Of a DNA stretch of 64,000 nt, positions 21,647-64,000 are shown in pieces. The notes beneath the pieces are model-generated. The model was not told the DNA's origin. It saw only the letters and a program-made list of their open reading frames with translations, and did no database searches. A program made the translations under genes and the position numbers. How positions within the stretch are numbered: the first letter of the stretch is position 1; each line of letters begins with the position of its first letter. The stretch is taken from the NCBI GenBank assembly GCA_002269645.1, contig NIVC01003958.1, forward strand, positions 3,540 to 67,539. The letters are read 5' to 3'. This stretch comes from Macrostomum lignano (Eukaryota).

Positions 21647-26383
<4,737 letters not shown>

Positions 26384-30650: not shown

Positions 30651-32339
30651 ACTGTGTCAAATTTAGCGAGAAAAGGCTAACAAACAAGTTGGTAAGAGTG
30701 TTACTGTAAGAAAGCTATTTTACTACAAAGGGAACTTGCTGTCTGAGCACAGATTTCTAAGGTAAGCAGCGCATACCAAGCAGGCAGCAAGTGAAACTGT
30801 TTTATTGGCTAAATCAGTAGTGCTGTTCATTTCCTTCCCATCTAGCACGTCAGTTTGAGCCAAGCTGGATCAGTAAGCCTAGCCGGCAGGAATGGAAGTG
30901 ACATGCTATGCCAGAAATTATCTATGGTAAGCACTGCTTACCAAGCAGTCGGGAACAGACAAATTATGGATTCTGGTTAGCCAGGAAGAGGCTCTAGACA
31001 TGAAAGAAGAAATCAGTTAAAAAGGTGCTAAATGGGTGTTCGCCTCGCGGCGGCTTGCTGGCGCACTAATCGGGCGTCATCACAAGTCTGACCAGTCGTC
31101 ATACAATTAACCGCTGCAAAAGCCAATTAAGTCGAAGATTTCTTACAATTTTCAACAAACTGTGTGCATATCGCATCTTCAATTGAAGGGCCAGCTCTAG
31201 CCGCTGCTAGTAGATTCTCAACAATTTTCAGTCTCACTAATTAGCTTTCAACCCCTTTCAATGCAATTGTTTTTCTTACCATGAAAACCACGGCAGAAAA
31301 AGAAGAAGCAGGAAAAATTTGGCAATTTTTTTACCGTGGCATTGACGTGCAGGTAAGGTTTTGAGGTTCAAGACCTGATTGAAGATTCATCACTGTGGGA
31401 GGAATTTAAAATTACGAGTAGATCACGAATGGGGCAGCACAATTAAAGTGCCACTATTTCACCTTGGCTACATACGAGATTGGAAAACTGAAGTAAATAA
31501 TAAAAACTGCCTGCTCAGCAGCGCGTTTGCTGGAATAAAATAGGCGGCCTCCTCTCACCGGTGGAGCGGTGGGCGCCACCCAACCAAAACGAGACAGAGC
31601 GTACATACGCGGCTGGGGTGCACAGAAAGAGCGTACTTGGGCACTAAAGCCGGTTTACTCAAGTGCAAGCCTAGCGCGAACCGCAGCCGAATACATCGGG
31701 CGGTAAACTGTGCTGGCTGTAGCTTTTCAGACATCAGCATCTCGGGCTGATCTGCCACCCGGCGTAAAACAGACAAGGGGAAATAAGACCCAATGTACAG
31801 TAAATGGAATAAGCAGACAAAAGCGTAGAAAAGCGCGCCTATATATTCGACACTTTCAAGTTTTGAAATCTACCGTCGTGAACATCCAGCAGCCTCCACT
31901 TGGCTTTATTACCGATTCCAGAACTAGAATCGGTTCGAAGCTTTTCATAGTTCCATTTTCAGAATCGGTTCCAGAACCGTGTTCTGGTTCTGGAATCGGA
32001 ATTATTCTGGTTCTAGAACCGATCTTCGTGAAAAGCCTTCACTCGTAAACGAGTGAATTTTTATTTCTTCGAAAGTTTAAGTTCTTCAAAAATTTGGCTG
32101 GGAATCGGAAGATTTTATATTAGAACTGACGTTCGTGTCGGCTTACACTACAATAACACATGATTTCTAATACATAGTTTATATTATAGCTAAGATCATT
32201 TACATTAAATGATTGTAACTATTTTTGCATATATATTTAAATAGTATTATTGTCAGGGTTTCGCTTTTGTCAGGTTGCTTATCAAAAATTAAATCTAATA
32301 AGACCTAATTGAAAATGAAATGCCTCTAGCATCTTGTAA

Positions 32340-32535
32340 ACTTTGTCCAACTCGGAATATCCCAACCGTTATTCCGACTGATTATTAAATACATTGCAAG
32401 TCTAAATATCATTCCGACTCTTATTTTGACTGATTATTAAATACATTGCAATGATTGGATGATACTTAGACTATTTCTAGAATAACCGCATTACGAGCTG
32501 GAATAATGGTCGGAATATTCTGAGTTGGACAAAGT
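32340..32535. mobile_element. MITE with about 37-bp imperfect TIRs
   Basis: CTTTGTCCAACTCGGAATATCCCAACCGTTATTCC versus the reverse complement of GGAATAATGGTCGGAATATTCTGAGTTGGACAAAG. TA (or TGTAAA) flanks both ends. Confidence 0.8.
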
Positions 32536-33099
32536 GTAAAAGGTCATACAAAACCATAAGCCTACATAAATATTATACTAAAAAATCAAGATATTCTATT
32601 TTAATTTTAGGCCAATGCTAAAGCCTTTGGCAAAGGCAAAGCCAAAAATTAAGATAAGTAATTTAGGAATATATAGCCTTAGGCCTAGGCTTAGGCCTAA
32701 TAAATTGCCTAGGCCTACTAGCTAATAGCACTACTCACTTTACTAGGCTTAGTAGGCCTAGTGCTTTGTTTGATAAAAATGCACTCTTAGAGACAGTTGT
32801 CTCCTAAGGCTAAACTAAAAATTTAATTGATCTCTACTGCAAACTTTGTACACATTTAACACATAGGCCTAATATACCAGATTAAAATATATACATGGCT
32901 AGAAATAGGATAGGGACTAAGGAGCCTACAATACAATGTCAATATACTATAAAATAAACATAAAAATAAAAGCTAATATTAAATTAAAACTAATATAAAA
33001 TAAAAGTAGGAAAAACTTGACTTTTTACTAATATTTTAACTAATATAATATAACAATTTTATTTAACTAATTTCTAAGTCCAATATGGTCATTTTGTAG

Positions 33100-33760
33100 C
33101 TTTTTAAAGCCTATTTTATTTATTGATAAAAAATCTAATATAGTTTGAAAGGTTAGGCTAAGATATAAAATATTGGGTTTTTATCTTATAGGTCTAATGA
33201 TAAAGTAATTAAAAAATCATTTTTGTTTAATTTTAAAAATATAGGAGCCTTTAATTTTTGTAAGTATTACTTTTAGGCCTAGTTCTTTTTATATTTATTT
33301 GTCTCTTTAATGAAAAAGATAATATAGTTTTTTATTGTAATAAAGGCAAAAAGCTAGATATATTTATAAAAACTTTTTTCCTTTTCTTTTTAGTTTATAT
33401 TACTTCTATATTATATAACTTCTATTTCTAATTATATTACTTCTATATTGCTTTTTAGCCTATAAGGGAAAGAACAAGCAAATGCATAACAATCCTAATA
33501 TCTTCTATAAAAGCAACAGATTAAAAAAGTAAATCAATGAATTCAAATACCTAGATGTATCATCTTCAAACCCAGTAATAACTCTAAAAGATACATTGCC
33601 CATCAGATCAAATAAGGATAATAATTCTACAATGTTTTAACTATTACATAAAGTCAAAGATACCACAGTCCACACTAGACATCATGCTTATCAGTAGACT
33701 ATTTAATTCTTGGGTCATATAAGTTATAACGTATGGTTATGAAATCTAGGGACCTTTAGC
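33100..33760 (+). pseudogene. Heavily mutated non-LTR reverse transcriptase remnant
   Basis: Collinear degenerate motifs LFIDKK-SN-IV* (FIDxKAFDxVW), L*VLLLGLVLF (PQGSxLGPxLF), NEFKYLD (EFKYLG) and SYNVW (YGxxW). Recognised by eye. Confidence 0.5.
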
Positions 33761-34115
33761 AACCTATATTTATCTCAAAACCATTGACAAAATTCTAAAA
33801 TTTCCATAAATACCTTCTTTACTTATCTAAAATCACTTGCAACTCTTTTATACTTGCAAAACTCAATTTAACACTTATCTCACTTACCATCTTGAATTTT
33901 TTCTTATATATTTCTTATATTATATTTCTTATATATATAAGAAATATATTTTAAAATAAAAATATTTTAATTTTATACAACCCCTGGAAAGTAAGGCCCA
34001 AACAACCCTTAGAAAGTGAACCTCCTTAAAAAACTACAAAACCTAGGTTTATCTTATGCTTGGGCGCAACCTGTTTGTTGCCAATAGAAATGGCCAAGTG
34101 ATTCCCAAGGTTGCG

Positions 34116-34725
34116 CATATATGCCCTATAGGAAAAAGTTGTAAAACCGCGGATGGTGTCCGGCGCACTTTTGAAATTTTTCTAAAGCGCAGCGCACGCA
34201 CAGGCGCAGCGCCTGCGCACGCTGCCCTTTCTTACTGGCTGCTGCTCTAGCAAATACATATACATGGAAATGGGTATAATACCTCTGTTGCAGGGGCTTA
34301 TACACTCGTAATTTATTAAGCTTAGAGATGTTCCGAAAATTCAATTTCAATTTTCCAAAATTTGAAATTTTTTAGGGAGCAAATTTCAATTTCGAAATAA
34401 AATTTAGAAGTGAAAATTTTGGTAGTGTCTAAAAAGTCGCTAAAAATAAACTACTTTCTACTACATATACATGTATTACTTTTTGCTTAAGCAGTAAATT
34501 GAAAGTAAAAAAGTGAGTGTTGATCATACTAAACTTTGTTTTTCTGAATTATGATTTTGGGAAATTTCAATTTTGATTTAGGAAAGTTAGCAAATTTTGA
34601 TTTCGACGAAACTGCAGATCTTCCGGAACATCTCTAATAATCCTAAAGCGCGGTAAAATAGTTTGACTCTTTTCTAAAGCGCGCGTCCGCGGGTTTTTAA
34701 CATTTATTCCAATAGGGCATATATG
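34116..34725. mobile_element. MITE with about 38-bp TIRs, containing a nested TA-flanked element (34325-34634)
   Basis: CATATATGCCCTATAGGAAAAAGTTGTAAAACCGCGGA versus the reverse complement at 34686-34725. Inner TIR is GAGATGTTCCG/CGGAACATCTC, flanked by TA. Confidence 0.75.
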
Positions 34726-37700
34726 GTTTATCTCACTTGCATATACAAACATTAAACCCTGGAGACAATTATAAAAAACAAAGCAATAATAACAAAACAA
34801 GTATATATCTCTTGGGAGCACAAACATTTCAAAAAATAGAAAACTACATAAAAGTTAGGCATTACAAAAATTGCTTTATGTATAAGAATATTTTTAGGCC
34901 TGATATAAAAAACTACTTCCCAAGTACTTTTAGAAGAAAAATACCTAGAAATCCTGCTAAAGCTTAAAACCAAGTTTGTACCAAACAAGTATACCCAAGA
35001 AAATGCAAACTTTTTGTCAAATATTCAGGAAATAAAATATTACACTATGTAGTTGAATATGCTGTTATACTAAATATCAGAAAAAAAGTATTTTAGACAA
35101 AGCCAATTGAGCACAGGGCATTTCTACAGCTTAGGCTATGCTATAAATGAAAGCAAAACTAAAAAAGACCTGCTAGCTATTGTAAAGATTTATAAACTCA
35201 TAAATAATCTTCATTCTTCTTTTACAACCAACATGAAAAGGTAGACAATACCCTGTATATACTACTCTATTATTACTTTTCTTATATCAATCAAATCCAT
35301 TATGTTGGACTTCCCAAAGCTAGATACTCCCTTTTGCTATATCTCCTTTCATATATCTGCAAAATAGAATTAGTATATTATATCTTTTGATATACTATAT
35401 TACCCCCTTTTCATTTTTTAATAAGGATTGGATAATAAAATAGTGGATCATAAGACAAAAAATGCCTAAATCTTCATGTTTGTATAATTTTTAAAATTAC
35501 ATTAGCAGTGCAACTTAGAATAGTTTTGAACAAAAATACTCATTTTGCAACTTACTTGAATCTCTAATCTTTTATACAACTTGTTTAATTCTTTGTAACT
35601 TAGTGTATTCTTTTCATTATGCTTTTTACTTTATTTTGCCTTTTCAATTTTGCTTCTTTGCCTTATTTTTTAGATACCTAGATAAAGACAACTCATTTTT
35701 AGTGTAATGAGTATATTGTATATATAATAAATATGTCAAAGTTATATATCAAAGTTTTAGCATTAAAACTAAAAATATTTTGTTACATTGCCCAAATTCA
35801 AGTTAAAGAAATATGGTTCAATAAAATGCTACTGTCTTATTGCCTTTTCATATGTTGTATTTGTTAAAATGTTTTTTTACATTAAAATATTTTTCCCTTT
35901 TCATGTTTTTGTGTATAAACTTTATATGCCTATGTTTTTTATTCCTTTGGCATATAATATAATATGGTATAAATCTAGAAAAGTCCAAATTTTTAAACAG
36001 AAGCTTAGCATTGTTTTAATTATTCTTTAAATAAGTGTGACTTATATTTAAACTTTTAAGAAATTTTACCTTAATTGATTTTTAAGTTTTAGGGTTTGCT
36101 TATATGCAGTATATACCTTTGCTAGCTAAAAGCTTTTTTATTTCTTTATCAAATTCTAAAAAATGATTTTTAATTGATAAAGTAGGCCTAGCATTTATAT
36201 TAATTTGCCATTTTTATATATTAGTTACATAATATAATATTGCAAGCTATGATGATTTCAATAAACATTAAATCTACAAATGTTATCAAAGTATTTATTC
36301 TAACAAATTTATCACTGCTTTATAAGCTAGTGTCCTTTTTAAGATGTGTATATATACTCTTTATTACTAATAGTAGTAATATATGTTGTAGGGCTTACTT
36401 CTGTCCTCCAACTATCCCACTATTGCCACCAAAGTTGTCACAGGGCTGATTCCTCTGTTCTGGAAATCTCAGCCGCTGATACCAAAGTTGTGCTAGGTTT
36501 TCAATTTTCCTCTGCTGATACTAAATTCTGCCTTTGGTATCTCTAACTGTTTCTTAGAATTTAATTTAAATATACTGGTAGCGTCTTATGTATTAATCTG
36601 GTAGCGTTCTTAGTATAGTCTGGTAGCGTTCTTAGTATATTAGTCTGGTAGCATTCTTAGTATATGGCCTGAGCGGTCTTACTGGTATATGTACTTTCTC
36701 TTTCCAGTCTGGGCGTTACCGAGATTAGAGGGTCACAGCGATCACTCTTAGTACTTTCTTTGCATGAATCCCTGATTCCCAACTCTCAATACCTCTTTAA
36801 AATAAGCAATGATCTGAGAATAAGTATTGAACAACGTTTTGAGCTTATAGCTATCGAACGAGTTATACTTCCATCCCTTCGGCTCTCTCCTATTTATACT
36901 AATCAATCGCGTATATTTAAAACAAACTCTTACAACTTGAGAATATTTCGCGTATTATAACAAAAGAATATTAATTTTCGCGCTAGTTCAAAAACAATAA
37001 TTCCTAGAAATAAGGTACCGCTACTACATATATAAATATATTAAGGTTTAAGTTAAGTCCAGGTAAATAATTAACTACTCTTATATAATCTATGATTTGA
37101 TTAGCACTAGGCTCTAAGCCATTTAAGTTGTCTACTAAGTATTAGTTATTTATTAGTTTATTTATTTCCTGGATCTGCCCTAATGCAACTAAGTTTTTTC
37201 TTTTTTTATAGCTGATAGAATATTCTAATTGAGAATTGAGATGCTTTAAATGTTTGAGCTTAAGTAGTATATACTGTTTTAGTAACATTGTAATTTAATT
37301 TAATATTGTATTTTAAAATTTTCTGAATTGCTTATACTCAAATGCAACCAATTTTCAGGTTGATCACATGTGATTTAAGTCAATTTTAGTTTTAGGATTA
37401 AATTAATCTTGTCAGCATTTATAGTTTTTATTTTCTATATTTTTTAATTTATAAATACCTTTCCATTACTTAACTTTGTGATATAATAATTAATAATTAA
37501 TAATATAATTTATTATATAAATAGTAGCACAAATCTGATTAAAATCAATAAAAGATACCACAAAGCACTTGTGCTGACTTCGACTGATATGATTCATAGG
37601 ATATATTTCCATAAAAAAACTTTATCCCCTCAAGTGTTTAAGGGAATACAGAATTGGAGTTTTCATTGCTTCAGATGTATTAATAGAGATCAGCTCAGTA

Positions 37701-38363
37701 ATTTCTCAGATAATTTCTCAGATAAACTATCAAGATTGCAAAATATCTACTTTCGCTCCCTGACAAAAAATTCACTGCCATTTGCTTAGGTTTGAGTGCC
37801 TTGCTTTGGCTGTGCTTCTTCACTCACTAGGAGCAGCGGCTGGTCATCATTATTTTTTAAGCAAAGCCAACTACACGCGTTTCATGGGCTCCTCTTAGCT
37901 CACGGTGTGCCACAAGCCCTGGCAGGTATGAGGAAGCGATCGCAACCTGTTCTCAGGCTATCATTAATGTCTTGAGCACAGAGGAACGAATGCACTCTGG
38001 CATGACTTGCAAGAGTGAGGCCGGTTTGCAACTCCTCCCGCTACGCCTGATCGATGCCTTCTCCGTGTCCGAATAGGCTTTTCGTCTTTGCTGCTTTCGC
38101 ATCTAGGGAATCAGCGATCCCTAGGGAACTTCTGCAACTGCTGGCACTGCCAATGCGTCGCCTTGACTCGCTCTGGCACTCCTTTCGTATCCCCCACCTC
38201 AGAGTTCCCCTGTCCTCCAATTGGCGGCCGGCTTCGCTCTGCTTTTCCTGCACCACTTTTCCTCACCCCCCTCCGCTTAAATACGCCAGCCGAGTTCAGC
38301 TGAAGTGCTGAGACTTCCGTGCCGCTTCTTGCTAGTTTGCCTGTCCGCCATCCCGCCGCCTTC

Positions 38364-51995: not shown

Positions 51996-52048
51996 TGATT
52001 TCAGCGCCCCCGCACATTCTCCACTATCGCGTCCGCTGCCGCCTCGCC

Positions 52049-55000
52049 ATGACGATTCGGCGAGCGGCCGCTCGTCCCGCGTGGCTTCGCCGCTGGCTGC
52101 ACGCGGCTGCTGGGCTGCGCCATGCGGAGGTCATCAGCGGCAACCAGCAGTTCCCCCTCATCAGCCCGCAGCAGGTGCGCCAGCTGCTGCGCCAGGGAGC
52201 CGAGCGGCACACGGCTGACGTGGCCGGCTGGCAGGTCTCCGTGCACTGCAACCAGGTGCCCTGCAACCGGCCCGTGGAGGACAGGTGACGGCTGGTCTTG
52301 GTTTCACTTGAAATTTCTTTCAATTTGTGCGTCTCCTGACTCAACTGCCACTCGTGGGTCACCTGACTCAACTGCCACTCGTGGGTCACCTGACTCAACT
52401 GCCACTCGTGGGTCACCTGACTCAACTGCCACTCGTGGGTCACCTGACTCAACTGCCACTCGTGGGTCACCTGACTCAACTGCCACTCGTGGGTCACCTG
52501 ACTCAACTGCCACTCGTGGGTCACCTGACTCAAATGCCACTAGCGGGTCACCTGACTCAACTGCCACTCGTGGGTCACCTGACTCAACTGCCACTCGTGG
52601 GTCACCTGACTCGAATGGCACTCGTGGGTCACCTGACTCGAATGCCACTCGTGGGTCACCTGACTCAACTGCCACTAGCGGGTCACCTGACTCAACTGCC
52701 ACTAGCGGGTCACCTGACTCAAATGCCACTAGCGCGGTCACCTGACTCGAATGCCACTCGTGGGTCACCTGACTCAACTGCCCCAATCTCCAGACTGGCC
52801 GTCAGCCGCCTGCTGATTGGGCCTCCCGTGCAGTCGCAGGACGGTCCGCTGCTTGTCGGCGTCTTCGACGGGCACGCAGGACCCGCGTGCGCGAACTCCG
52901 TGCACCTGCGCCTGCCCGACTACCTGGCCGTGGCCATGGCCGACCCGCTGCGCCTGCACGACATCAAGGTGGCCGGACAGGCCCTCAGTCTCAACATTGC
53001 CAGGCTGCCCCACGGCCCGGAACTCGAGGAGGAGCTCGGCCGGCTGCACGACCAGCAGGTGCTGCGCCTGTTGTCATAGCAACTTACTAGCAACGCTCTG
53101 TCGCTGTTCTTCATTTTTAACTACACCAGCCTGCTGGATTCTTCGCTCCCTACCGCAAATCCTGTGCTGGATTCACCGCTCCGCAAATCCTGTGCTGGAT
53201 TCTCCGCTCCGCAAATCCTGTGCTGGATTCTCCGCTCCCTACCGCAAATCCTGTGCTGGATTCTCCGCTCCCTACCGCAAATCCTGTGCTGGATTCTCCG
53301 CTCCCTACCGCAAATCCTGTGCTGGATTCTCCGCTCCCTACCGCAAATCCTGTGCTGGATTCTCCGCTCCCTACCGCAAATCCTGTGCTGGATTCTCCGC
53401 TCCCTACCGCAAATCCTGTGCTGGATTCTCCGCTCCCTACCGCAAATCCTGTGCTGGATTCACCGCTCCGCAAATCCTGTGCTGGATTCTCCGCTCCCTA
53501 CCGCAAATCCTGTGCTGGATTCTCCGCTCCCTACCGCCCCATCCTGTGCTGGATTCTCCACTCCCTACCGCAAATCCTGTGCTGGATTCTCCGCTCCCTA
53601 CCGCAAATCCTGTGCTGGATTCTCCACTCCCTACCGCCCCATCCTGTGCTGGATTCTCCACTCCCTACCGCAAATCCTGTGCTGGATTCTCCGCTCCCTA
53701 CCGCCCCATCCTGTGCTGGATTCTCCGCTCCCTACCGCAAATCCTGTGCTGGATTCTCCGCTCCCTACCGGCTCCTCGAATTCCACTCTCCCTCTGCTTT
53801 CGCCCCTCCCCTCTTTAACCAGCCAGCCACCCGTACCGCAGCTGTCCGCCTTCACCTCGGAGACGCTGTCCATGAGCGAGCCGGAGCCGCTCGGCCACCG
53901 CCTGCGGGAGGCCATGCAGCGCCTCGACACGGACATCGGCGAGGCTGCGCAGCCCCGGCCAGGCGCCGCTGGCCTCAACCGCGCGCTGCTCCGCGTGGCG
54001 CTGTCCGGCTGCGTGGGCACCGTGGCGCTGCTGGAGCCGCCCGACCGCCTCCACGTGCTGCACGTTGGCGACTGCGCCGCCGTCCTCGGCCGCTGCCACG
54101 ACCAGCTGTGGTACGCGCACAAGCTCACCGAAGAGCACCGAGCCGACAATCCCGCCGAGCTCGAGCGCCTCATGCGCTCCCATCCGGTCAGCGAGCGCGA
54201 CTTCCTTGTCCGCTACGACCGCCTGCTCGGCGAGCTCATGCCGCTGCGCGCGTTCGGCGACATTCGCTACAAGTGGAGCGCCGACCTGCTGCGCACCGCC
54301 GGCCGCCTGCTGCAGCTGCCCGCCACCTACAACCCCGTGCCGCAGTACTACTACACCCCGCCTTACCTCACCGCCGAGCCCGACTTCGCCACGCAGCAGG
54401 TGACCTACGCTCATGTGACCCCCTCCTCTAATGTGACCCCCTCCTCTAATGTGACCCCCTCCGCTCATGTGACCCCCTCCTCTAATGTGACCCCCTCCTC
54501 TAATGTGAATCCCCCTCTAATGTGGTCCCCTCCGCTCATGTGACCCCCTCTAATGTGGTCCCCTCCGCTCATGTGACCCCCTCTAATGTGACCCCCTCGG
54601 CTCATGTGACCCCTCCTCTAATGTGACCCCCTCCTCTAATGTGACCCCCTCCGCTCATGTGACCCCCTCCTCTAATGTGACACCCTCCTCTAATGTGAAT
54701 CCCCCTCTAATGTGGTCCCCTCCGCTCATGTGACCCCCTCTAATGTGACCCCCTCCTCTAATGTGACCCCCTCCGCTCATGTGACCCCCTCCTCTAATGT
54801 GACACCCTCCTCTAATGTGAATCCCCCTCTAATGTGAATCCCCCTCTAATGTGGTCCCCTCCGCTCATGTGACCCCCTCTAATGTGACCCCCTCCTCTAA
54901 TGTGACCCCCTCCGCTCATGTGACCCCCTCCTCTAATGTGACACCCTCCTCTAATGTGAATCCCCCTCTAATGTGGTCCCCTCCGCTCATGTGACCCCCT

Positions 55001-55677: not shown

Positions 55678-56516
55678 CCGCTGGTCTCTACTGACAGTAG
55701 TTTCGGGTGAAAACAACAGCCTATTTACAGTCTCTGCTGGTCTCTACTGACAGTAGTTTCGGGTGAAAACAACAGCCTATTTACAGTCTCTGCTGGTCTC
55801 TACTGACAGTAGTTTCGGGTGAAAACAACAGCCTATTTACAGTCTCTGCTGGTCTCTACTGACAGTAGTTTCGGGTGAAAACAACAGCCTATTTACAGTC
55901 TCTGCTGGTCTCTACTGACAGTAGTTTCGGGTGAAAACAACAGCCTATTTACAGTCTCTGCTGGTCTCTACTGACAGTAGTTTCGGGTGAAAACAACAGC
56001 CTTTTTACAGTCTCTGCTGGTCTCTACTGACAGTAGTTTCGGGTGAAAACAACAGCCTATTTACAGTCTCTGCTGGTCTCTACTGACAGTAGTTTCGGGT
56101 GAAAACAACAGCCTATTTACAGTCTCTGCTGGTCTCTACTGACAGTAGTTTCGGGTGAAAACAACAGCCTATTTACAGTCTCTGCTGGTCTCTACTGACA
56201 GTAGTTTCGGGTGAAAACAACAGCCTATTTACAGTCTCTGCTGGTCTCTACTGACAGTAGTTTCGGGTGAAAACAACAGCCTTTTTACAGTCTCTGCTGG
56301 TCTCTACTGACAGTAGTTTCGGGTGAAAACAACAGCCTTTTTACAGTCTCTGCTGGTCTCTACTGACAGTAGTTTCGGGTGAGACAACAGCCTTTTTACA
56401 GTCTCTGCTGGTCTCTACTGACAGTAGTTTCGGGTGAGAACAACAGCCTTTTTACAGTCTCTGCTGGTCTCTACTGACAGTAGTTTCGGGTGAAAACAAC
56501 AGCCTATTTACAGTCT
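55678..56516. repeat. 56-nt tandem repeat, about 15 near-identical copies
   Basis: Period 56, no spacers. Confidence 0.95.
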
Positions 56517-58381
56517 CTCCAAGATTTCAATTCACACCAAAAAGGCAGGTTGGCGCCGGCTCTTCGAAACGAATAAATAATCTGCTCGCTCTCCGTTGCC
56601 ACCCCGGCGCTCTGGCAAGGATTTGCTAAGAAGGATTTCCCCCTTTGTGCTTCTCTGCTTTCCTGTAATTTTTTTTTCACGTGCTCGCTAATCTCCTTAG
56701 CTATTCGAGGCTGGAATTCTGTATCCGGCTGCCTTGAATTTTGTCTGCTTTTTAGTTGCTTTTAGAGCAGCGGAGGCACTCGGCTGATTGCCGCCCCCCC
56801 GCAGAGGCCCCTGGGCCCGCACTCTGTCTGATAACTTTGCTTTATTAGCAACTTACCTAATTGTCCAACGCGGGGTCAGCTCTCTGTGTGCTCACGCTGA
56901 CTCTCAGTTCTCTCATACTGCTGGAAGTAGCCTGTCCGCTATGTTCCAGTGCCAGCCGCCTGCTAAAGTACAGATAACATCTTCACAGCAGTCTGTAATG
57001 TGTTGCCTGCATTGCTCATGTGCGCTGCCTGTTTTATAACTGTAAGTCTGCTCTGTCCGCCTACCCGCCTGTTCGTCTCATTCATTTTGTCTGCCGGCAT
57101 GAAATTAATAAATTAAAAAAAATGAAATATTAAAAATTCTTGTTTCTAGCTTGAAGATCCATATTTTAAATGCAATAAATGCTAATTTGAGCAATAAAAT
57201 TGTCTTGACTGATTATTTTACTAAGAGAGAGTTCATAGCCCGAGGCAAGGGTCAATTAGAGAAATCTCTCTACCCATTAGTCTGCGGGGGCTTCCCATCA
57301 GCGTCAGTTCTATTTTTTTCTGTACAGCCGGGGTCGCACCGGTTTTGGCCTGTATTGTTGCTATTCAATAGGTGCTGTGCGGCGGCACTGTGCTTTATGC
57401 TCACTCAGTTCCAAGTTGTGACGTCCAATGCAAAAATAGACACTTCAGGCACTCGGCTCGGTCGTCTGTGAGCGCTCTTAGATGGAGCTACGCTCGAACT
57501 GCTCGAACTGGTGTCTAAAATTAGATACTCGTCATGACTCGCAGTAAGATGACTCTGCCCAGCTGGCTGGCAGGCCCCATCACCCGCGCCGAGTCTCACT
57601 CGGGTGCTGCTGACGCTGCAGTCGCCCTGCCGGCGAGGACAGGCGCAAACTCTGCGTTTCGTCGAATGACTGGGAGGGAAATTCAGGCAGCTCAACTGAA
57701 AACGCGTCATTTGGGGTTGGTTTGTGCCCGAAAATCGACCGGTGGCTGTCTTGCGATTCACGCCAATGAGGGCCAGGTCACAAGGCACAGAACACATGCC
57801 TTACGATTAGAAAGTCAAGAGCCGCCGTACACCCTGTGTGAGCGAGTGCATGGGTGCGTGCTTGCGTACAGTATTAGCGGCCCTTGTATGTGCTCAGGAG
57901 TCAGCGGAATGGGCAGAATTGCCCCAGCGTACTGGTTGCGAGCCGGTGTCGCTGAAGGCGTTGCGCCTTGGAGCCCGCAGCCCCTCCTGCAGCAACATGT
58001 TAATGACGCCGCTCTGCGTCAGTTGATGCTCGCGCAACGGCTTAGTTAACAAGGCCTGAGTTCCATACAGACAAACTTTGCCTTCTCTTTTTAGTTGCAC
58101 TGACACCGTTTGGACGGCAGCTTCTAGTGGGTGTGTGGGTGCAATTTGGTTCGTGGGTGCAAATTTCCATGTTGAACTCAAATTCAGCAAAATGTTTCGG
58201 GTTGTCAGAGATGACAGGATTTGACAACATTTTGACATTGTATTTTAGATTAATAGCGGTAGAGAAGACGAAACGGATTAGGGAATAGTACAAGTGAGAT
58301 TGTGAGTCAAATCGCAGCCTCTGCAGCTGCATCTCGCAGGTGTTCAAGTTTATTTTTAACTCTCCAAAACAAATATTTGAG

Positions 58382-59280
58382 TCAGCGACGTCTCCACGAG
58401 TCCTGCGCAGCTCCCGCCCACTGCTGCCGCCCGCCCATGGTGACGTTGAGCCTGTTGTCGTCCCCGACGATGTTGAGCAGGCCTCCGTTCTGGTTCACCC
58501 CGCCGCAGTCCAGCAGGTCGGCTTCGCTGCCGCCGGCCTCCCTCCCCAGTCTGGACCGCGGGCCGCACGCCTCGACCGTCTGCTCGGTTCGCAGGCTGGC
58601 CATCGAGTTCCATCGGCCGTTGGGCTGGTGCTCGGGCCGGCAGAGCCGCAGCTCCGGCTGGGCCGCCGACTCCGCGGTGTTGACAGTCGCCGGATTCGCC
58701 CCGGCGCTGCTTCTGGCCGGCGGAATCGGCATCTGCCGGAACTCCCAGAACAGCGACTTCAGCTCCGCCAGGGCGAAACGCCGCGGCTTTGTCTCAACGC
58801 AGCTGAGCAGCTCCGCCTCCCTCTCCAGCAGCTCCTGCCGGGACTTCACTTTCCTCCGCTCCAGAAACTTCACGAGCTGCCGGTCCGTGTTGGCCGCCTT
58901 CAGCGAGTTTCTCCAGCGCTTCTTCGCCGGCTTTTCTTCGAGGGCCTCCTCCCAGCCGCTGCTGTAGGCGCTCTCGCCGCGGTTCCAAAGCTTGGCGTTG
59001 TCCAGCACCTTCAGGAGCTCGTTGTGGGAGAAGCGCTGCCTCCGAGACCCGGCTCGGTCGATGATGCTCTTGCGATGCTCGACCAGCTGCTGCACATCCG
59101 TGACCTGCTGCACCTCGATGAAGTAGTCCGCAGGCACCTGCGCGTTTTTTGTCTCTTAAAAAAGGTCACGAGATCCTGGCTGACCGGCCGGCTGCCGATT
59201 TCCGCATAGCCGCTCTCGCCTGAGACCCGCGGCAGTTGCGGGTTTCTGAGGCGGACTGGAAAATCGCTCAGTTCGGACAT
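58382..59280 (-). CDS. Family gene A: helical domain (probably two copies), linker and RHIM-like motif; one frameshift at T6 59145-59150
   Basis: Adding one base joins ORF 59280 (QDLVTFFKRQK) to ORF 59137. C-terminal QNGGLLNIVGDDNRLNV. Confidence 0.7.
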
Positions 59281-59565
59281 GATCGCCGAGATGGTTCGCT
59301 GCTTGGCTACGTGGCGGTTCTGAGTCTTGGCTGGCTGGCTGCTTCGTCATATTTTTATATCTTGGGTTCATTCCGCATTATAGTGCCTCCCCCTAAAATA
59401 TCTGTGACTAATAATACCCTCTAAGTGGGCTTTTGTTGTCACAATGTACAGTGCAGACTCGTGCACAATGCCCGGCATAATTTTGTATATTTAAAATAGA
59501 GCTGGCAGACAGATGCGCCTCCATAGTTTTGCCCAGAACCGCCGCTTCATCCAAGCAGCTCAGAG

Positions 59566-60474
59566 ATGAGTGACGTGAGTAGGGCGATTCAGTCCTGGCA
59601 GGGCGACGCGCGGGTGAAGAAGTTCATCATCAAGTCCTGCCCGAAGGGCGACAGCCTCGGCCAGTTCCTCCGGGATGAGAATCTGCGAAGTCTCAACAAG
59701 AAAATTGCCAAACAGAAAAATGCGAAATTCGCTATTAAAGATGTTGACGCGCGCTGTGAACCATCTCAGGGACAGCTGGGCTGCCAAGATGTCGCAAGCC
59801 GCACGAGCGGAGCCGGGCTACGATAGCCTCGCCGAATCCGGCGGCCGAGCGGAGTCGGGCTACGATAGCCTCGCCGAATCCCCCTGCCGCAGCTCAGCCT
59901 CTGAAGCCAGCGCCACCCAGACTTGCAGAAGCGTCTCCTCTCTGGCCAACCGGCCGCTGCCGCCAGTGCCATCAGAGCGGCGGGACTCCGACCGCGGCTA
60001 CCAGACTCAGTCAGGCAGCCTGTCTGATGAGGACTCGCAGGCTGCCGGAGCTGCAGCAGCCCTAGCTGCGACCGCGGAGCCGAGCGTCCAGCCTCCGCGG
60101 CCGCAGCCGAGACGCTCTGCAGTCAGGGTGAGTCACAATGATGCCGCGAGCAGCTCCTGCGGTGCCGCCGAGGCTGCCGAGCAGCTGGTGGCGGACTCTG
60201 AGCAGGACTCGGCTGGCCGCACCTGGTCGGAGGCCGCGGCAGTCAGAGCTCCGCAGCCCCGGCCGCGGCTCAGCTTGGCCCGTCGTTCCAGCGAGACTCG
60301 TGGCGGCGATGACGCGTCCAGCCTCTCGGGACCCGCCGCCACCGCTGCGGCCCCGCCATCGAGCGGTCGACGCCGGTCTGCCAGAACGGCTTCTTCAACA
60401 TCCACGGCGGCAAAAACGAGATCGATGTCGACCTGGAGGCTGTGAAAATGTTGATGGACTTCAAATCGAAATGA
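59566..60474 (+). CDS. Family gene B: helical domain, Tyr-motif linker and RHIM-like motif; frameshifts near 59743 and 60351
   Basis: MSDVSRAIQSWQGD...; GYDSL twice; terminal frame QNGFFNIHGGKNEIDVDLEAVKMLMDFKSK*. Confidence 0.7.
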
Positions 60475-61075
60475 TGACCTTCTGATTCATATTTTGCACT
60501 GCTCAATTGGTCATTTTTTCTCTGTAAAATGAAATAAAAACAATAAATCTTTTCGCGCGATATCTTTTCAAAAATATATTCGAATAACCTCATTGAAATA
60601 GTTGATCATCGTTTTTTTATTTCTGAGATCCGAATTGGATTGTAAAGTTTCTGTTGTCCTTGCATTTCGTTAACCTTGCCGTGCTGGCGCTGGCCTCGAT
60701 GCAGTAAGAGTTTGCAAAATAGTCAAGGCTATTTTTAGAAACCATTGTTGGGAATTTCAAACAGAAGAGCTAATAGTGTCTAATAGAGGCACAACCCTTT
60801 TGCCCAACCCAACCCAACCCTTCTGACCAACCCCAAATGTTTATTCAGGCACCTGACGTCAGGGCCTATTAGGTAGGTGCGAATGTCAAGGTACTTTTGT
60901 AATTTTTTTTTTATTCCTGACAATGTTTATTCGTGTTATTGGAACTGCGGCCTACGGTTCTGTGCTTATTAAATGATATGACAACCCGCAGCCAGCGGCT
61001 ACCTCGTATTAAATTTTTTTGCTCCTGATACACTTATAAATGCGCTGCAGACTTTCCAGTACTTAGCGCTCGGAC

Positions 61076-61806
61076 ATGCCAAGCCAGGTGGTCAGGAGAT
61101 TCGCTGCTGGCAGGGCGACCCAGCCGTCAAAAAGTTCGAGTCCGCCTGCTCGAAGTCGACCAGCCTGCAGGCGTTCTTCAGCGAGCGCAAGGATCAGCGA
61201 CTATTGAAGAAGTTCCACGATCAGAAGCCGCAGAAGTTCGAGCGCAACCAGCTGCTAGATGCCCTGCAGCACTCCGGAACTGCCTGAGTCAGCGGCAACA
61301 GCGCGAGAACGCCACCGGAAGCGCCGCCGGAAGCGCCGCCAGAAGCGCCGCCGGAAGCGCCGCCGGAAGCGCCGCCGGAAGCGCCGCCGGAAGCGCCGCC
61401 GGAAGCGCCGCCGGAAGCGCCATCGGAAGCGTCGAAACCGGCTACTGCAGCGTGAGCACCAGCTCAAGTCTTCCCTTGGACGCAGCTGCGACCCATCGCT
61501 CGGTGGGTGCCCGCGGCCTCCGTTCTCAGCCCGGTGGATCCGCAGCGGCCGAGCCTGTCTACGACGAGCTGTACCGCGCCGGCGGCTCCCTGCGGCACCA
61601 GCAGCTGTTGAAGCGCCGAAGCCGCGGTCTCGCGCCTCCCTGGCGACGCTGGCGCCAATCTGGTGGGCTGCGCCTCGCCAACTCCGCCGGTGCCGGCGCC
61701 GCGAGCCTCGAGTGACGCGCGCTGGCGGCAGAGCAGCGGCATCAATATTTCTATAACTTGTCCTGTCCAGCTGCAGACTGAGTGTTATCAAGGACGACTG
61801 AACTAG
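61076..61806 (+). CDS. Family gene C (about 4 apparent single-base deletions; gene or pseudogene)
   Basis: EIRCWQGDPAVKKF...KPQKFERNQLLDAL is clearly homologous to gene B. Also (GSAA)n, ETGYCS, EPVYDEL, APKPRSRASL and RQSSGINIS. Confidence 0.6.
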
Positions 61807-62490
61807 GAGGAAGAGACACTTAGAGGAAAATAGTAGTATTTGCAGCAGGACAGTCCACAACCAGTACGCTGGGGCAGTTCTGCCCATTCCGCTGACCCCT
61901 GAGCACATAGAAGTCCTGACTTTCTAATCATCAAGCATGTGCGCTCGTCTGTGCCTTTGGGGGGGGGGGGTTGGCCCTCATGGTTGTGAATTGCGCGAAA
62001 ACCATACACAAAGCCCCAAGTGAACGTGGCCAGGGTGATGCGAGGTCAGACGCCAAAATGATTTTACAAGGAGTGAATATTTCGCAGCCCGAATTCCAGT
62101 GGAATTTATTTATTCTTAATCTTCTACTTAAGCTGCTCTTAGCTATCATATCCCTGATTTTTTAAGCCAAATTATTAGAGTCAAATTCATCTTATTGACA
62201 GCCTGTCACCTCACGGTTCGTGTAAATCAATTGTTCAAGTATAGCAGATGTTGAATTGCCATGCAGTTTCATGCGATCTTGCCTGTCCCGTTTCAGATCT
62301 TTTCAGTAGTTTTTGCAGTTCATTTTTTTTCAATTTAAGCGTAGTTTTTTAGTTTTAATAAGGCACTTAGTAAGCCGCCCTTACTAGTCAGTGTCTAATT
62401 ATAGACCTATTGTACATTTAGTAATTTGCCGAGCGTACAGCCTAAAAATGCCGAGCGCTCTCCCTTACAGCCGCACCGACAGCCATCGCG

Positions 62491-63313
62491 ATGAGCTCAA
62501 ATGCGCTCTTTCTGATCGACATCGTCCGCGACTCGGGCGGCAGCCGGGAGGCCGGGAATTTCGTCATCAAGAACTTGCGAAGAACCTCACGGCGAAAGAC
62601 TTCCTGGACAAGAACTACAGCAGGCGGCTGTCTCGTCAGTTCGAGGCATCAAGAAACAGCCGTGCTCGCAGCGGGAGTTCCAGCAGCTCCTCGGCAAAAT
62701 GAGGCGGCTCAGCCAGGCCTCAGTGAGCGGCGGCGAGCGAGACTCCGCCTACGACAGCTCGACAATTTCATCCCGCGCCTCCAGTGCCAACCAGCTGGTG
62801 GCGGCAAAGGCGGCGGAGGCGGCGGAGGCGAAGGCGGCGGAGGCGGCCAGGCGGAGGCGGCCAAGGCGGAGGCAGCCAAGGCGGAGGCAGCCAAGGCGGA
62901 GGCGGCCAAGGCGGAGGCAGCCAAGGCGGAGGCGGCCAAGGCGGAGGCGGCCAAGGCGGAGGCGGCCAAGGCGGAGGCGGCCAAGGCGGAGGCGGCCAAA
63001 GGCAACTGGGAAGCCACGCGGTGGTGCAGCCGGCGCAGCGGCTCGGAGCTCCGCCGCCGATTCTGACGCCGGGCTCGGAGAGGCCCGGAGGCGAGCCGCA
63101 GCGGTTGGCTCAGCCGCGGCTGCCCACGGTGCCACGCAGGTGGCAGATCGGCAGCAGCCGCCGCCTCCGCCGCCGCCGCCATCCGCACCGGCACCTCAGC
63201 CGCAGCCGCAGCCGCAGCCGCAGCCGCAAGCGATCTTCAGGCCAGGCAGAGTCAGGCAGAGCGGTGCCATCAACGTCGTGGGCCACAGGACCAGCATCGC
63301 GGTGCGCGACTAA
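62491..63313 (+). CDS. Family gene D (about 5 apparent single-base deletions; gene or pseudogene)
   Basis: NFVIKNL-KNLTAKDFLD...RRLSR aligns with gene B KFIIKSCPKGDSLGQFLR...RSLNK. Also DSAYDS, (AAKAE)n and terminal RQSGAINVVGHRTSIAV. Confidence 0.6.
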
Positions 63314-63771
63314 GCGGAGATTTAAGGCCGGTGAACTGCGCTGTACATTAACTTTTCTGAATGCCAAACTGACATTAGCCTACTGACTGACCCTGTGTAC
63401 ATTATCCAGCATGCGAATAATAAATTTATGATCCGTTCGCTCACAGTATGTAAACTTCTTTTCTGTTGCAAACAATAGCTCTTGGTCCCGCCTTGCCGTT
63501 ACTTGAGGAGAGCATCAAAGCAGATGGGGCTCTACAGTGCAGTGGCAGCGCTAACGAGCTGCTCCGCTCAAGCTCAAAAACGGGAATCACCAAAGCCTCA
63601 GATTTTTAAAAAGTATCGCTTCGCACAAAGCACACCTGTCCTCCGCGTGCCTTTGTTCGCGCCAAGCTCCTGGAAACGTTGCGTTCAGACCCTGCCTGCC
63701 TCCTTGCCTGCTGCTCTCTTCACTGATAAACACGGCACCGATCTCGTTAGCTCAGACTGCCTTATGCTCTG

Positions 63772-63975
63772 CCTTCTGCTCTGCCCTCTGCTCTGCCTTC
63801 TGCTCTGCCTTCTGCTCTGCCTTCTGCTCTGCCCTCTGCTCTGCCTTCTGCTCTGCCCTCTGCTCTGCCTTCTGCTCTGCCTTCTGCTCTGCCTTCTGCT
63901 CTGCCTTCTGCTCTGCCTTCTGCTCTGCCTTCTGCTCTGCCTTCTGCTCTGCCCTCTGCTCTGCCTTCTGCTCTC
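63772..63975. repeat. 12-nt minisatellite
   Basis: Unit CTCTGCCTTCTG. Confidence 0.95.
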
Positions 63976-64000
63976 TCCTCCTCCCTTACCTTCTTGAGAC

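What the first reader, a model, noticed from the sequence alone, without database searches (positions are those of the whole stretch)
58382..63313. Cluster of four hidden paralogs sharing a C-terminal RHIM-like motif: candidate amyloid-signalling adaptor family
Seen: after repairing single-base indels, four adjacent intronless genes end in related motifs. A has QNGGLLNIVGDDNRLNV (58442-58493, minus), B has QNGFFNIHGGKNEIDV (60382-60429), D has QSGAINVVGHRTSIAV (63257-63304), and C has a partial RQSSGINISITC (61729 onward). The motif is kept although the surrounding linkers are unrelated low-complexity repeats, and B's copy lies in a frame the ORF track misses. Established: RHIMs (e.g. RIPK3 VQVGDNNYLTM) are short beta-arch motifs that drive homotypic amyloid assembly in immune and cell-death adaptors. 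A's G-D-D-N-R-L-N-V is in register with G-D-N-N-Y-L-T-M, but the canonical [IV]Q[IV]G core is replaced by N[IV]xG. Inference: folded domain plus disordered linker plus motif resembles an adaptor set that co-polymerises, possibly an undescribed invertebrate signalosome.
Basis: partly seen in the sequence, partly recalled or inferred. Interest (0 to 1): 0.85.

Follow-up and report, generated by a model that had tools for sequence, protein, structure and literature searches.

The report
Flatworm orphan genes share C-terminal motif
Four neighbouring genes of the flatworm Macrostomum lignano really do encode related small proteins that end in the same short glycine/asparagine-rich motif. The motif looks like the kind of sequence that lets proteins stack on one another, but it is not a RHIM, and amyloid formation has not been tested.

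Summary
The window is the end of Macrostomum lignano Mlig_3_7 contig NIVC01003958.1.

**The genes.** Genes A (58382-59280, -), B (59566-60474, +), C (61076-61806, +) and D (62491-63313, +) are intronless paralogues. Their frameshifts are assembly errors. Two other contigs of the same assembly cover the locus almost base for base and carry all four as intact ORFs that end in the motif.

**Shared architecture.**
- One orphan helical module of about 70 residues (two in A).
- An E[ST][GA]Y..S-type acidic/serine motif.
- An unrelated, disordered, low-complexity linker.
- The motif V-x-Q-[NS]-G-x-Φ-N-[IV]-x-G-x-x-[NT]-x-Φ-x-[VL], where Φ is a hydrophobic residue.

**Independent support.** An A-like protein from an unidentified sequencing run is 44% identical to A, has an unrelated linker and keeps the motif. 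Patterns fixed before it was found match it (chance about 5e-5).

**RHIM membership fails.**
- The defining G-Φ-Q-Φ-G core is replaced by G-x-Φ-N-Φ-x-G.
- Pfam and Protein Data Bank (PDB) sequence searches find no RHIM, although a RIPK3 RHIM control does.
- Only paralogue A resembles RIPK3, and only marginally.

My best reading, at about 0.35, is a new β-arch, amyloid-signalling-like assembly motif. An ordinary docking peptide is about equally likely. No immune domain or motif-bearing partner was found. Interest is moderate.

The parts
58382..59280 (-). Gene A, 299 aa when intact. It has two tandem helical modules, two ES[GA]Y motifs, a disordered linker and the C-terminal motif. The window copy lacks one G in a G-run (C-run on the + strand) at about 59128-59130, which splits the ORF.
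   Evidence: Searches give the ORFs and frames. One search shows identity to NIVC01004833.1 apart from that one base. Searches give the intact protein PAA46496.1 / UniProt A0A267DBG6. One search shows the internal duplication.
58436..58498 (-). A motif: VNQNGGLLNIVGDDNRLNVTM.
   Evidence: It is identical in the homeologous locus L001.
59281..59565 (.). 285-bp spacer between the divergently oriented start codons of A and B. A shared bidirectional promoter is an inference.
   Evidence: from coordinates only. Not tested.
59566..60474 (+). Gene B, 302 aa when intact. It has one helical module, a duplicated E[SP]GYDSLAES motif, a Ser/Ala/Pro-rich linker, the motif and a short C-terminal helix. The window copy has an extra base near 59752 and a missing base near 60369.
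   Evidence: Intact copies are PAA59452.1 on NIVC01002260.1 and PAA93898.1 on NIVC01000020.1. AlphaFold2 model.
60376..60435 (+). B motif: VCQNGFFNIHGGKNEIDVDL.
61076..61806 (+). Gene C, 244 aa when intact. It has one helical module, a (GSAA)n linker, an ETGYCS motif and a degenerate motif. The window copy has seven frame-breaking indels relative to L001.
   Evidence: Intact in NIVC01002260.1 and in L001.
61720..61803 (+). C-terminal region of C: RWRQSSGINISITCPVQLQTECYQGRLN. The Q-S-G-x-I-N-I half is kept. The second Gly and the Asn are lost.
62491..63313 (+). Gene D. It has one helical module, a DSAYDS motif, an (AEAAK)n and Pro/Gln-rich linker and the motif two residues before the stop. The window copy has five frame-breaking indels relative to L001.
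   Evidence: Intact in NIVC01002260.1 and in L001.
63251..63310 (+). D motif: VRQSGAINVVGHRTSIAVRD.
59810..59869 (+). B's tandem acidic/Ser-Tyr motifs (AEPGYDSLAES, AESGYDSLAES). Counterparts lie at 58958-58975 (-) and 59200-59217 (-) in A, 61434-61451 in C and 62741-62758 in D.
   Evidence: P0004 also has them, as ESVYAS and ESGIYD.

Best explanation
**What it is.** The region holds a tandem cluster of four transcribed, intronless genes. They belong to an orphan family seen so far only in Macrostomum lignano and in one unidentified sequencing sample.

**Architecture of each protein.**
- One helical module of about 70 residues with five predicted helices (two in A) and no recognisable fold or family.
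- A conserved acidic/Ser-Tyr motif, [DE][ST][GA]Y..S.
- A rapidly diverging, disordered, low-complexity linker.
- An uncharged C-terminal motif of about 18 residues: V-x-Q-[NS]-G-x-Φ-N-[IV]-x-G-x-x-[NT]-x-Φ-x-[VL].

**Most likely mechanism (inferred).** The motif is a strand-arc-strand-arc-strand (β-arch) element. Its two invariant glycines would form the turns. The Asn and Gln residues would form ladders. The alternating Ile/Val/Leu residues would form the core. Stacked in register, copies of the motif would let the paralogues, and possibly unknown partners, assemble homotypically. That would work like the amyloid signalling motifs RHIM, HET-s, PP and BASS, but this motif is a distinct sequence class.

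**Shown.**
- The genes are real, intact and paralogous.
- The motif is conserved at the protein level, lies at the C-terminal end of a predicted disordered tail, and has charged residues only at its variable positions.

**Inferred.**
- β-arch formation, homotypic assembly, and any signalling or immune role.
For: **Real, intact genes.**
- Intact ORFs lie on overlapping and homeologous contigs of the same assembly.
- The GenBank gene models come from a genome-guided RNA-seq assembly, which implies transcription (PMC5730564).

**The motif is under constraint.**
- It is kept in A, B and D, and partly in C, although the linkers cannot be aligned.
- It is kept in P0004, which is 44% identical to A in the folded part and has an unrelated 40-residue linker.
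- P0004 matches two of the three patterns fixed before it was found (chance 4-7e-5).
- Synonymous codons differ at conserved Gly, Gln, Asn and Val residues.

**Features typical of amyloid signalling motifs.**
- About 11 constrained positions spread over 18 residues, which is long for a docking peptide.
- Two Gly residues flank a Φ-N-Φ strand, followed by G-x-x-N-x-Φ-x-Φ as in RIPK1 and RIPK3.
- Conserved positions carry no charge, and only the degenerate C copy has a Pro inside the motif. This fits the β-arcade rules described in PMC4262963.
- AlphaFold2 leaves the motif disordered and undocked, with pLDDT 31-55.
- The layout 'helical domain, linker, C-terminal motif' matches HeLo/Bell effectors and Drosophila Pirk (PMC4262963; bioRxiv 10.1101/2020.01.06.895854).
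Against: - There is no experimental or computational test of fibril formation. ArchCandy and multimer modelling were not available.
- The motif fails the RHIM/PP/BASS3 signature and every profile test against RHIM.
- No protein of another architecture (NLR, kinase, Death, TIR) carrying the motif was found. The whole M. lignano proteome could not be scanned for a short motif, so this absence is weak evidence.
- The N-terminal module has no link to immunity or cell death.
- Amyloid signalling motifs are rare in animals, whereas docking peptides are common.
- Copy C has lost the second Gly and the Asn.
- Very few sequences are available: four paralogues and one outside relative.
Confidence: 0.35

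Rival explanations
1. The motif is an ordinary linear docking element. It would bind as a single β-strand or hairpin to a folded partner, possibly the family's own helical module in cis or in trans, without forming an amyloid. The paralogues keep it because they share that partner.
For: - It is a conserved island in a disordered tail, which is the classic context of a docking peptide.
- All paralogues share both the module and the motif.
- Such elements are far commoner in animals than amyloid motifs (general knowledge).
- B has a predicted short helix directly after the motif, so the tail may hold more than one binding element.
Against: - AlphaFold2 does not dock the motif on the helical module in either model. 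The alignments were very shallow, so this is weak evidence.
- About 11 constrained positions over 18 residues, all uncharged and rich in Gly, Asn and β-branched residues, is unusual for a docking peptide.
- No known linear-motif class that I could recall fits (from memory, not tested).
Confidence: 0.35
2. The motif is a true, highly diverged homologue of the metazoan RHIM/cRHIM, and the family is a flatworm counterpart of RHIM adaptors such as Pirk, IMD or TRIF.
For: - The C-terminal half, G-x-x-N-x-Φ-x-Φ, is in register with RIPK3 GDNNYLTM and RIPK1 GNHNYMD.
- A against RIPK3 gives p about 0.02.
- Pirk likewise carries a RHIM-like motif at its C-terminus (PMC4262963).
Against: - The defining G-Φ-Q-Φ-G and [IV]Q[IV]G cores are absent. 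Asn occupies the position three residues before the Gly, where cRHIM has Val (definitions from bioRxiv 10.1101/2020.01.06.895854 and PMC13506858).
- There is no Pfam RHIM hit at E<=10.
- There is no PDB RHIM hit at E<=10, while the positive control works.
- B, C, D and P0004 show no similarity to RIPK1 or RIPK3 above shuffled controls.
Confidence: 0.07
3. The motif is a stability or localisation signal, such as a C-terminal degron or a targeting signal, rather than an assembly element. It might act together with the DSGxxS-like motif.
For: - It lies at or near the C-terminus.
- It co-occurs with a conserved [DE][ST][GA]xx[SDE] motif that resembles β-TrCP phosphodegrons. The resemblance is from memory.
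Against: - The distance from the motif to the C-terminus varies from 2 to 19 residues, which argues against a strictly C-terminal signal.
- The pattern matches no degron or targeting class known to me (from memory, not tested).
Confidence: 0.13
4. The cluster consists of decaying pseudogenes, and the shared motif is a relic of recent duplication with no function.
For: - The window copy carries about 15 frame-breaking indels.
- The density of 1-bp indels in C and D is no lower than in intergenic DNA.
- The L001 copy of A has its own frameshift.
Against: - The same locus is intact on overlapping contigs that differ almost only by indels, so the breaks are consensus errors.
- The paralogues are old: their linkers cannot be aligned and their modules are 14-40% identical. 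The motif survives nonetheless, with synonymous codon differences.
- P0004 is an intact ORF with the motif.
- dN/dS between the homeologues is 0.25-0.78, on small counts.
Confidence: 0.03

Closest known systems
RHIM (RIP homotypic interaction motif) of RIPK1, RIPK3, ZBP1, TRIF and viral M45
   Same: It is a short motif of about 18-20 residues in a disordered region. It has a conserved Gly turn followed by x-x-N-x-Φ-x-Φ, and a central hydrophobic-amide-hydrophobic triplet (Φ-N-Φ here, Φ-Q-Φ in RHIM). It is shared by several proteins that could then interact homotypically.
   Different: The core is G-x-Φ-N-Φ-x-G instead of G-Φ-Q-Φ-G, so the middle strand is two residues longer and has Asn in place of Gln. 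No similarity is detectable at profile level. No kinase, Death, TIR or Zα domain is attached. Fibril formation is untested.
Drosophila cRHIM proteins, especially Pirk/Rudra (also IMD, PGRP-LC and PGRP-LE)
   Same: Pirk is a small protein without recognisable enzymatic domains, with internal repeats and a RHIM-like motif at its C-terminus (PMC4262963). The overall layout is similar.
   Different: The cRHIM core is VxxG (PMC13506858), whereas here Asn sits three residues before the Gly. There is no sequence similarity to Pirk or to IMD-pathway proteins. I am not aware of an IMD pathway in flatworms (from memory, not checked here).
Fungal and bacterial amyloid signalling motifs (HET-s/HRAM, sigma, PP, BASS1-10) on HeLo, HELL or Bell effectors
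   Same: The order is the same: an N-terminal helical domain, a flexible linker and a C-terminal motif of about 20 residues rich in Gly, Asn, Gln and aliphatic residues. Genes that carry the same motif are clustered in the genome.
   Different: In those systems the motif is shared between an effector and the N-terminus of an adjacent NLR. Here only 'effector-like' paralogues carry it, and no NLR was seen in the window or within about 7 kb downstream of D. The helical module shows no similarity to HeLo or MLKL. The host is an animal.
SAM-like / (HhH)2 five-helix modules (considered for the N-terminal module)
   Same: The size is about 70 residues, with five predicted helices including a long last helix, and the modules are in tandem in A. 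The weak Foldseek hits are to NusA AR1-AR2, RNA polymerase α-CTD, the RAD51 N-terminal domain and SAMHD1.
   Different: All of these hits are non-significant; the best is E=0.37. There is no SAM hit in Pfam or among PDB sequences. I do not assign this fold.

Membership tests
RHIM (Pfam RHIM; RIPK1/RIPK3 type) | Central tetrad [IV]-Q-[IV]-G within G-Φ-Q-Φ-G (definition from bioRxiv 10.1101/2020.01.06.895854). | tested here: not met
   The cores are GLLNIVG (A), GFFNIHG (B), GAINVVG (D) and GLVNVCG (P0004), i.e. G-x-Φ-N-Φ-x-G. The regex [IV]Q[IVLC]G..[NS].[ILMV].[IV] gives 0 hits in the window.
RHIM (Pfam RHIM; RIPK1/RIPK3 type) | Sequence or profile similarity to known RHIMs. | tested here: not met
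   The four C-terminal peptides (A, B, C, D) give no Pfam family at E<=10. The motif profile and the A peptide give 0 PDB hits at E<=10. The RIPK3 24-mer control finds RIPK1 RHIMs at E 0.01-0.18. In Smith-Waterman alignments against RIPK1 and RIPK3 with shuffled controls, only A against RIPK3 reaches p about 0.02, uncorrected.
RHIM (Pfam RHIM; RIPK1/RIPK3 type) | A conserved Gly followed by x-x-N-x-Φ-x-Φ. | tested here: met
   The sequences are GDDNRLNV, GGKNEIDV, GHRTSIAV (Thr in place of Asn) and GQGNQVAL. RIPK3 has GDNNYLTM.
RHIM (Pfam RHIM; RIPK1/RIPK3 type) | A non-globular motif flanked by disordered sequence. | tested here: met
   AlphaFold2 gives pLDDT about 40-55 for B and about 31-35 for P0004 across the tail and motif. 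The motif is not packed on the helical domain. The alignments were shallow.
RHIM (Pfam RHIM; RIPK1/RIPK3 type) | Forms cross-β fibrils and mediates homotypic interaction. | not testable with these tools
   This needs ThT, EM or ssNMR, co-aggregation assays, or multimer modelling.
RHIM (Pfam RHIM; RIPK1/RIPK3 type) | Sits in proteins with immune or cell-death domains (kinase, Death, TIR, Zα, NACHT). | tested here: not met
   A, B, D and P0004 (whole) and the N- and C-terminal pieces of C have no Pfam domain. Foldseek against the PDB gives nothing below E=0.37.
Drosophila cRHIM | A VxxG core (PMC13506858). | tested here: not met
   The residue three positions before the conserved Gly is Asn in A, B, D and P0004.
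NLR-associated amyloid signalling motifs (HRAM, PP, sigma, BASS) | The same motif occurs at the C-terminus of an effector and at the N-terminus of an adjacent NLR/STAND protein. | tested here: not met
   In the window, in the 21-kb homeologous locus L001 and in about 7 kb downstream of D in L007, only the four paralogues carry the motif. Neighbouring genes are a PP2C and retroelements. The rest of the genome was not searchable.
NLR-associated amyloid signalling motifs (HRAM, PP, sigma, BASS) | A motif of about 20 residues rich in Gly, Asn, Gln and aliphatic residues, after a helical domain and a flexible linker. | tested here: met
SAM domain | A five-helix bundle of about 70 residues recognisable by profile or by fold. 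| tested here: inconclusive
   Five helices are predicted per module at pLDDT 70-90. There is no SAM hit in Pfam or PDB sequences. Foldseek finds only non-significant SAM-like or HhH hits, the best at E=0.37.
β-TrCP phosphodegron (DSGxxS) | D-S-G-x-x-S, phosphorylated and bound by β-TrCP/Slimb. | tested here: inconclusive
   The motifs found are ESGYDS, EPGYDS, DSAYDS, ETGYCS, ESAYSS, ESGYAE and, in P0004, ESGIYD and ESVYAS. Only the pattern resembles the degron, and the consensus is recalled from memory. Phosphorylation and binding are untested.

The most novel reading that the evidence does not exclude
The motif Q-[NS]-G-x-Φ-N-[IV]-x-G-x-x-N-x-Φ-x-[VL] would be a previously undescribed class of animal amyloid signalling motif, independent of RHIM and cRHIM. 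Through it, a family of flatworm-specific helical-module proteins would co-polymerise into a signalling or regulatory assembly, possibly switched off through the adjacent DSGxxS-like phosphodegron. That would extend prion-like signalling in Metazoa beyond the RHIM lineage.
Probability: 0.15. Interest if true: 0.8.

Novelty: new variant of a known kind. Interest (0 to 1): 0.42.

Why it matters
**If the motif does drive templated assembly.** It would be the first animal amyloid-signalling motif outside the RHIM/cRHIM class. It would sit in Macrostomum lignano, a transparent flatworm in which stable transgenesis is established (PMC5730564), so live imaging of fusion proteins and mutation of the motif are feasible. 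It would also bear on whether amyloid signalling motifs arise repeatedly by convergence.

**If it is only a docking peptide.** The result is a modest annotation gain: a lineage-restricted family with a defined architecture.

**Practical points, whichever reading is right.**
- The frameshifts in this contig are assembly errors.
- Several GenBank models at this locus are truncated or end in the wrong frame. PAA93897.1 is one, and so are the 116-, 256- and 101-aa models on this contig.
- Intact versions already exist on other contigs.

Tried and rejected
- **My own first repairs were wrong.** I placed A's and B's frameshifts at A/T homopolymers. The intact copies and P0004 put them elsewhere: a GGG run in A, and a CG-rich site in B.
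- **Word-indexed protein searches** with A, with B and with an A/P0004 alignment returned only M. lignano proteins and P0004.
- **The exhaustive HMMER search of 1.84 billion representative proteins** added only P0004.
- **The metagenome scan** found nothing.
- **Pfam scans** at E<=10 on whole proteins, modules and motif peptides gave no meaningful family and no RHIM, HET-s, SAM or Death-fold hit.
- **Foldseek of both AlphaFold2 models against the PDB** gave no match with E below 0.37. I raised a SAM-like fold from the five-helix pattern and dropped it as unsupported.
- **PDB sequence searches** with the A-type profile gave only a chance hit to a designed TPR protein.
- **Expression data.** The gene identifiers do not occur in the searchable literature or in the supplements that are held.
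- **Source of P0004.** The runs SRR30276812 and SRR30276804 could not be traced to an organism.
- **Pseudogene reading.** I rejected it once the overlapping contigs were found.
- **DNA- or RNA-level conservation, or gene conversion, of the motif.** I rejected this because the paralogues use different synonymous codons.

Full report
**1. Where the window comes from**

[quoted passage not shown] An exact look-up of the window's own ORF places it on GenBank assembly GCA_002269645.1 (Mlig_3_7), contig NIVC01003958.1, which is 67,539 bp long. The window is contig positions 3540-67539, so the finding lies at the very end of a contig.

The rest of the window holds a PP2C phosphatase gene, a Ty3/gypsy element and another RT/RNase H element. 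Mlig_3_7 is a Canu assembly of PacBio reads, polished with Pilon. Its GenBank gene models come from a genome-guided RNA-seq assembly (PMC5730564). The genome holds three near-identical subgenomes, and 93% of read pairs map to more than one locus (PMC10733133). That makes short-read polishing unreliable (my inference).

**2. The observation**

Three-frame translation shows the four genes and their motifs at, or within 3 nt of, the stated coordinates:

| Gene | Coordinates | Strand | Motif |
|---|---|---|---|
| A | 58382-59280 | - | VNQNGGLLNIVGDDNRLNVTM |
| B | 59566-60474 | + | VCQNGFFNIHGGKNEIDVDL |
| C | 61076-61806 | + | RQSSGINISITCPVQLQ (degenerate) |
| D | 62491-63313 | + | VRQSGAINVVGHRTSIAVRD |

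Regular expressions for the motif hit only these sites in the six-frame translation of all 64 kb. Shuffled sequence gives 0.03-0.07 hits. That test is circular, because the patterns were derived from these sites.

**3. The frameshifts are assembly errors**

Three lines of evidence agree.

- *The homeologous locus.* The locus on NIVC01000020.1 (L001) is 88-97% identical in DNA and keeps the same gene order, including the PP2C gene. It carries B, C and D as single intact ORFs with the motif in frame. Most single-base differences from the window are deletions in short C or G runs.
- *Intact GenBank proteins.* The 90%-identity clusters of the window's ORFs contain two more GenBank proteins. PAA59452.1 is B, 315 aa as annotated and 302 aa from its Met. 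PAA46496.1 (UniProt A0A267DBG6) is A, 299 aa.
- *Overlapping contigs.* The contig that carries PAA59452.1, NIVC01002260.1, starts inside this locus. It aligns to window 58701-64000 with 5 mismatches and 73 gap positions in 5335 columns, and B, C and D are all intact there. The contig that carries PAA46496.1, NIVC01004833.1, is identical to the window across about 920 nt of gene A, except for one extra G in a GGG run at window position about 59128-59130.

So the same locus was assembled more than once, and this copy has uncorrected indels. The exact frames of some low-complexity linkers were not: D's repeat is AEAAK rather than RRRRP.

Between the window-type copy and L001, pS is 0.04-0.07 and dN/dS is 0.25-0.78, on small counts.

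**4. Anatomy of the family**

- *Helical module.* B, C and D share an N-terminal module of about 70 residues (WQGDxxVKKF...SLxxFL...). B and C are 40% identical. B-D scores z=5.3 and C-D z=3.8 against shuffles.
- *A has two modules.* In P0004, module 1 against module 2 gives z=7.2. In A the value is 4.1, and C against A module 1 gives 4.4.
- *Structure prediction.* AlphaFold2 predicts five helices per module at pLDDT 70-90. Everything after the modules is disordered, including the motif, at pLDDT 31-55. B has a short helix after its motif.
- *No known family or fold.* Neither Pfam, nor PDB sequences, nor Foldseek against the PDB (best E=0.37, to NusA) identifies the module.
- *Acidic/Ser-Tyr motif.* After the module, every member has one: ESGYDS, DSAYDS, ETGYCS, ESAYSS or ESGYAE.
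- *Linkers.* They are unrelated low-complexity sequences.
- *Gene arrangement.* A and B are divergently oriented, with 285 bp between their start codons.

**5. The motif is under protein-level constraint**

Aligned, the motif reads V-x-Q-[NS]-G-x-Φ-N-[IV]-x-G-x-x-[NT]-x-Φ-x-[VL].

The exhaustive HMMER search found one relative outside the known M. lignano set. This is P0004, a 230-aa intact ORF on two Logan contigs of about 1 kb from runs SRR30276812 and SRR30276804.

- It is 44% identical to A over the two helical modules.
- In DNA it matches the window over only one 183-nt stretch, at 67% identity.
- Its 40-residue linker is unrelated to A's.
- It ends ...ADQSGLVNVCGQGNQVALTIT.
- It matches two of the three patterns I had fixed. 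The chance for shuffled P0004 is 4-7e-5.

Codon alignment shows that the conserved residues use different synonymous codons. The first Gly is GGA, GGC, GGT or GGG. Gln is CAG or CAA. Asn is AAC or AAT. This rules out DNA-level conservation and gene conversion as explanations.

Charged residues occur only at variable positions. Proline occurs within the motif only in the degenerate C copy.

**6. Is it a RHIM?**

No. The published signature common to RHIM, PP and BASS3 is G-Φ-Q-Φ-G (bioRxiv 10.1101/2020.01.06.895854). The Drosophila cRHIM core is VxxG (PMC13506858). Here the two glycines are six residues apart (seven in A, which has an extra Gly), around x-Φ-N-Φ-x.

The profile tests all fail:
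- Pfam reports no RHIM, even at E<=10.
- The motif profile and the A peptide find nothing among 177,635 PDB sequences at E<=10.
- As a control, a 24-residue RIPK3 RHIM finds RIPK1 RHIMs at E 0.01-0.18 in the same search.
- With shuffled controls, only A against RIPK3 is marginal (p about 0.02, 10 comparisons). B, C, D and P0004 are not similar.

What is truly shared is the G-x-x-N-x-Φ-x-Φ half and the general grammar of β-arch motifs.

**7. What it most likely does**

Several features are what functional amyloid signalling motifs look like, according to PMC4262963 and the BASS paper:
- About 11 constrained positions lie within 18 residues.
- Two invariant glycines bracket a hydrophobic-Asn-hydrophobic strand.
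- A further N-x-Φ-x-Φ strand follows.
- Charge is excluded from the conserved positions.
- The setting is disordered.
- The layout is 'helical domain, linker, C-terminal motif', repeated in clustered paralogues.

I therefore rank a β-arch homotypic assembly motif of a new sequence class first, but only at about 0.35. Nothing here tests fibril formation. No partner of another architecture was found. Amyloid motifs are rare in animals.

A conventional docking peptide that binds a folded partner is about equally likely (0.35). A stability or targeting signal gets 0.13, true RHIM homology 0.07, and pseudogenes or chance 0.03.

**8. Limits**

- No NLR-like gene and no other motif-bearing gene lies in the window or within about 7 kb downstream of D. 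Adjacency is not expected in an animal genome in any case.
- I could not retrieve expression data for these genes.
- The organism behind P0004 is unknown.

**9. Verdict**

The motif is real, conserved and non-globular, and it has the look of an assembly motif. 'RHIM-like' is not a valid family assignment. The amyloid, adaptor and immune roles remain hypotheses. Interest is moderate.

Noticed in passing
window 58701-64000 (and gene A, 58370-59290): The end of this contig duplicates the start of contig NIVC01002260.1 (5 mismatches, 73 gap positions in 5335 columns). It also duplicates part of NIVC01004833.1, where gene A differs by one base in about 920. The locus is therefore assembled redundantly, and this copy has unpolished indels. 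As a result the four GenBank models on this contig (116, 256, 101 and 289 aa) are truncated or patched.
   Followed up: yes
L001 10001-10957 (NIVC01000020.1, protein PAA93897.1): The homeologous copy of gene A has its own complex indel after ...RWNSMA. The annotated 318-aa protein therefore ends in the wrong frame and lacks the motif, which is present in the +1 frame.
   Followed up: yes
window 59810-59869, 58958-58975 (-), 59200-59217 (-), 61434-61451, 62741-62758: Every family member, and P0004, carries one or two acidic/Ser-Tyr motifs ([DE][ST][GA]Y..S: ESGYDS, DSAYDS, ETGYCS, ESAYSS) just after the helical module. The pattern resembles DSGxxS β-TrCP phosphodegrons such as Emi1 DSGYSS. That resemblance is from memory and was not tested.
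   Followed up: partly
window 58730-59190 (-): Gene A and its relative P0004 contain two tandem copies of the helical module found once in B, C and D (QDLVTFFKRQKTRR... and RQLVKFLERRKVKSR...). Module 1 against module 2 gives z=7.2 in P0004.
   Followed up: partly
window 59281-59565: A and B are transcribed divergently, with only 285 bp between their start codons. This suggests a shared bidirectional promoter.
   Followed up: no
L003 1-32 and L004 1-73; L003 880-1003: The two Logan contigs that encode P0004 are identical from 2 nt upstream of the ATG onward but differ completely before that point. They could be alternative 5' exons or two loci. Downstream of the gene lies a fragment resembling a reverse transcriptase (judged by eye), and L003 ends in an Illumina adapter.
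   Followed up: no
window 52000-55000: The neighbouring PP2C phosphatase gene (Pfam PF00481) is embedded in several tandem-repeat arrays, with periods of about 27-33 bp judged from the offsets of the BLAST self-overlaps against L001. It is conserved next to the cluster in every copy of the locus.
   Followed up: no
window 11533-15495 (+) and 21647-24658 (-): There is an apparently intact Ty3/gypsy pol ORF of 1320 aa (protease, RT, RNase H, integrase). A second ORF of 1003 aa has RT and RNase H domains but no integrase hit.
   Followed up: partly
window 32001-38000: A 6-kb AT-rich island (GC 27-31%, against 50-60% elsewhere) has no ORF of 90 aa or more. Its origin is unknown.
   Followed up: no
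window 56000-56518, 63757-63974, 27556-27820: Three minisatellites: 56 bp x 9.3 copies, 12 bp (CTGCCTTCTGCT) x 18 at the contig end, and 28 bp x 9.4.
   Followed up: no
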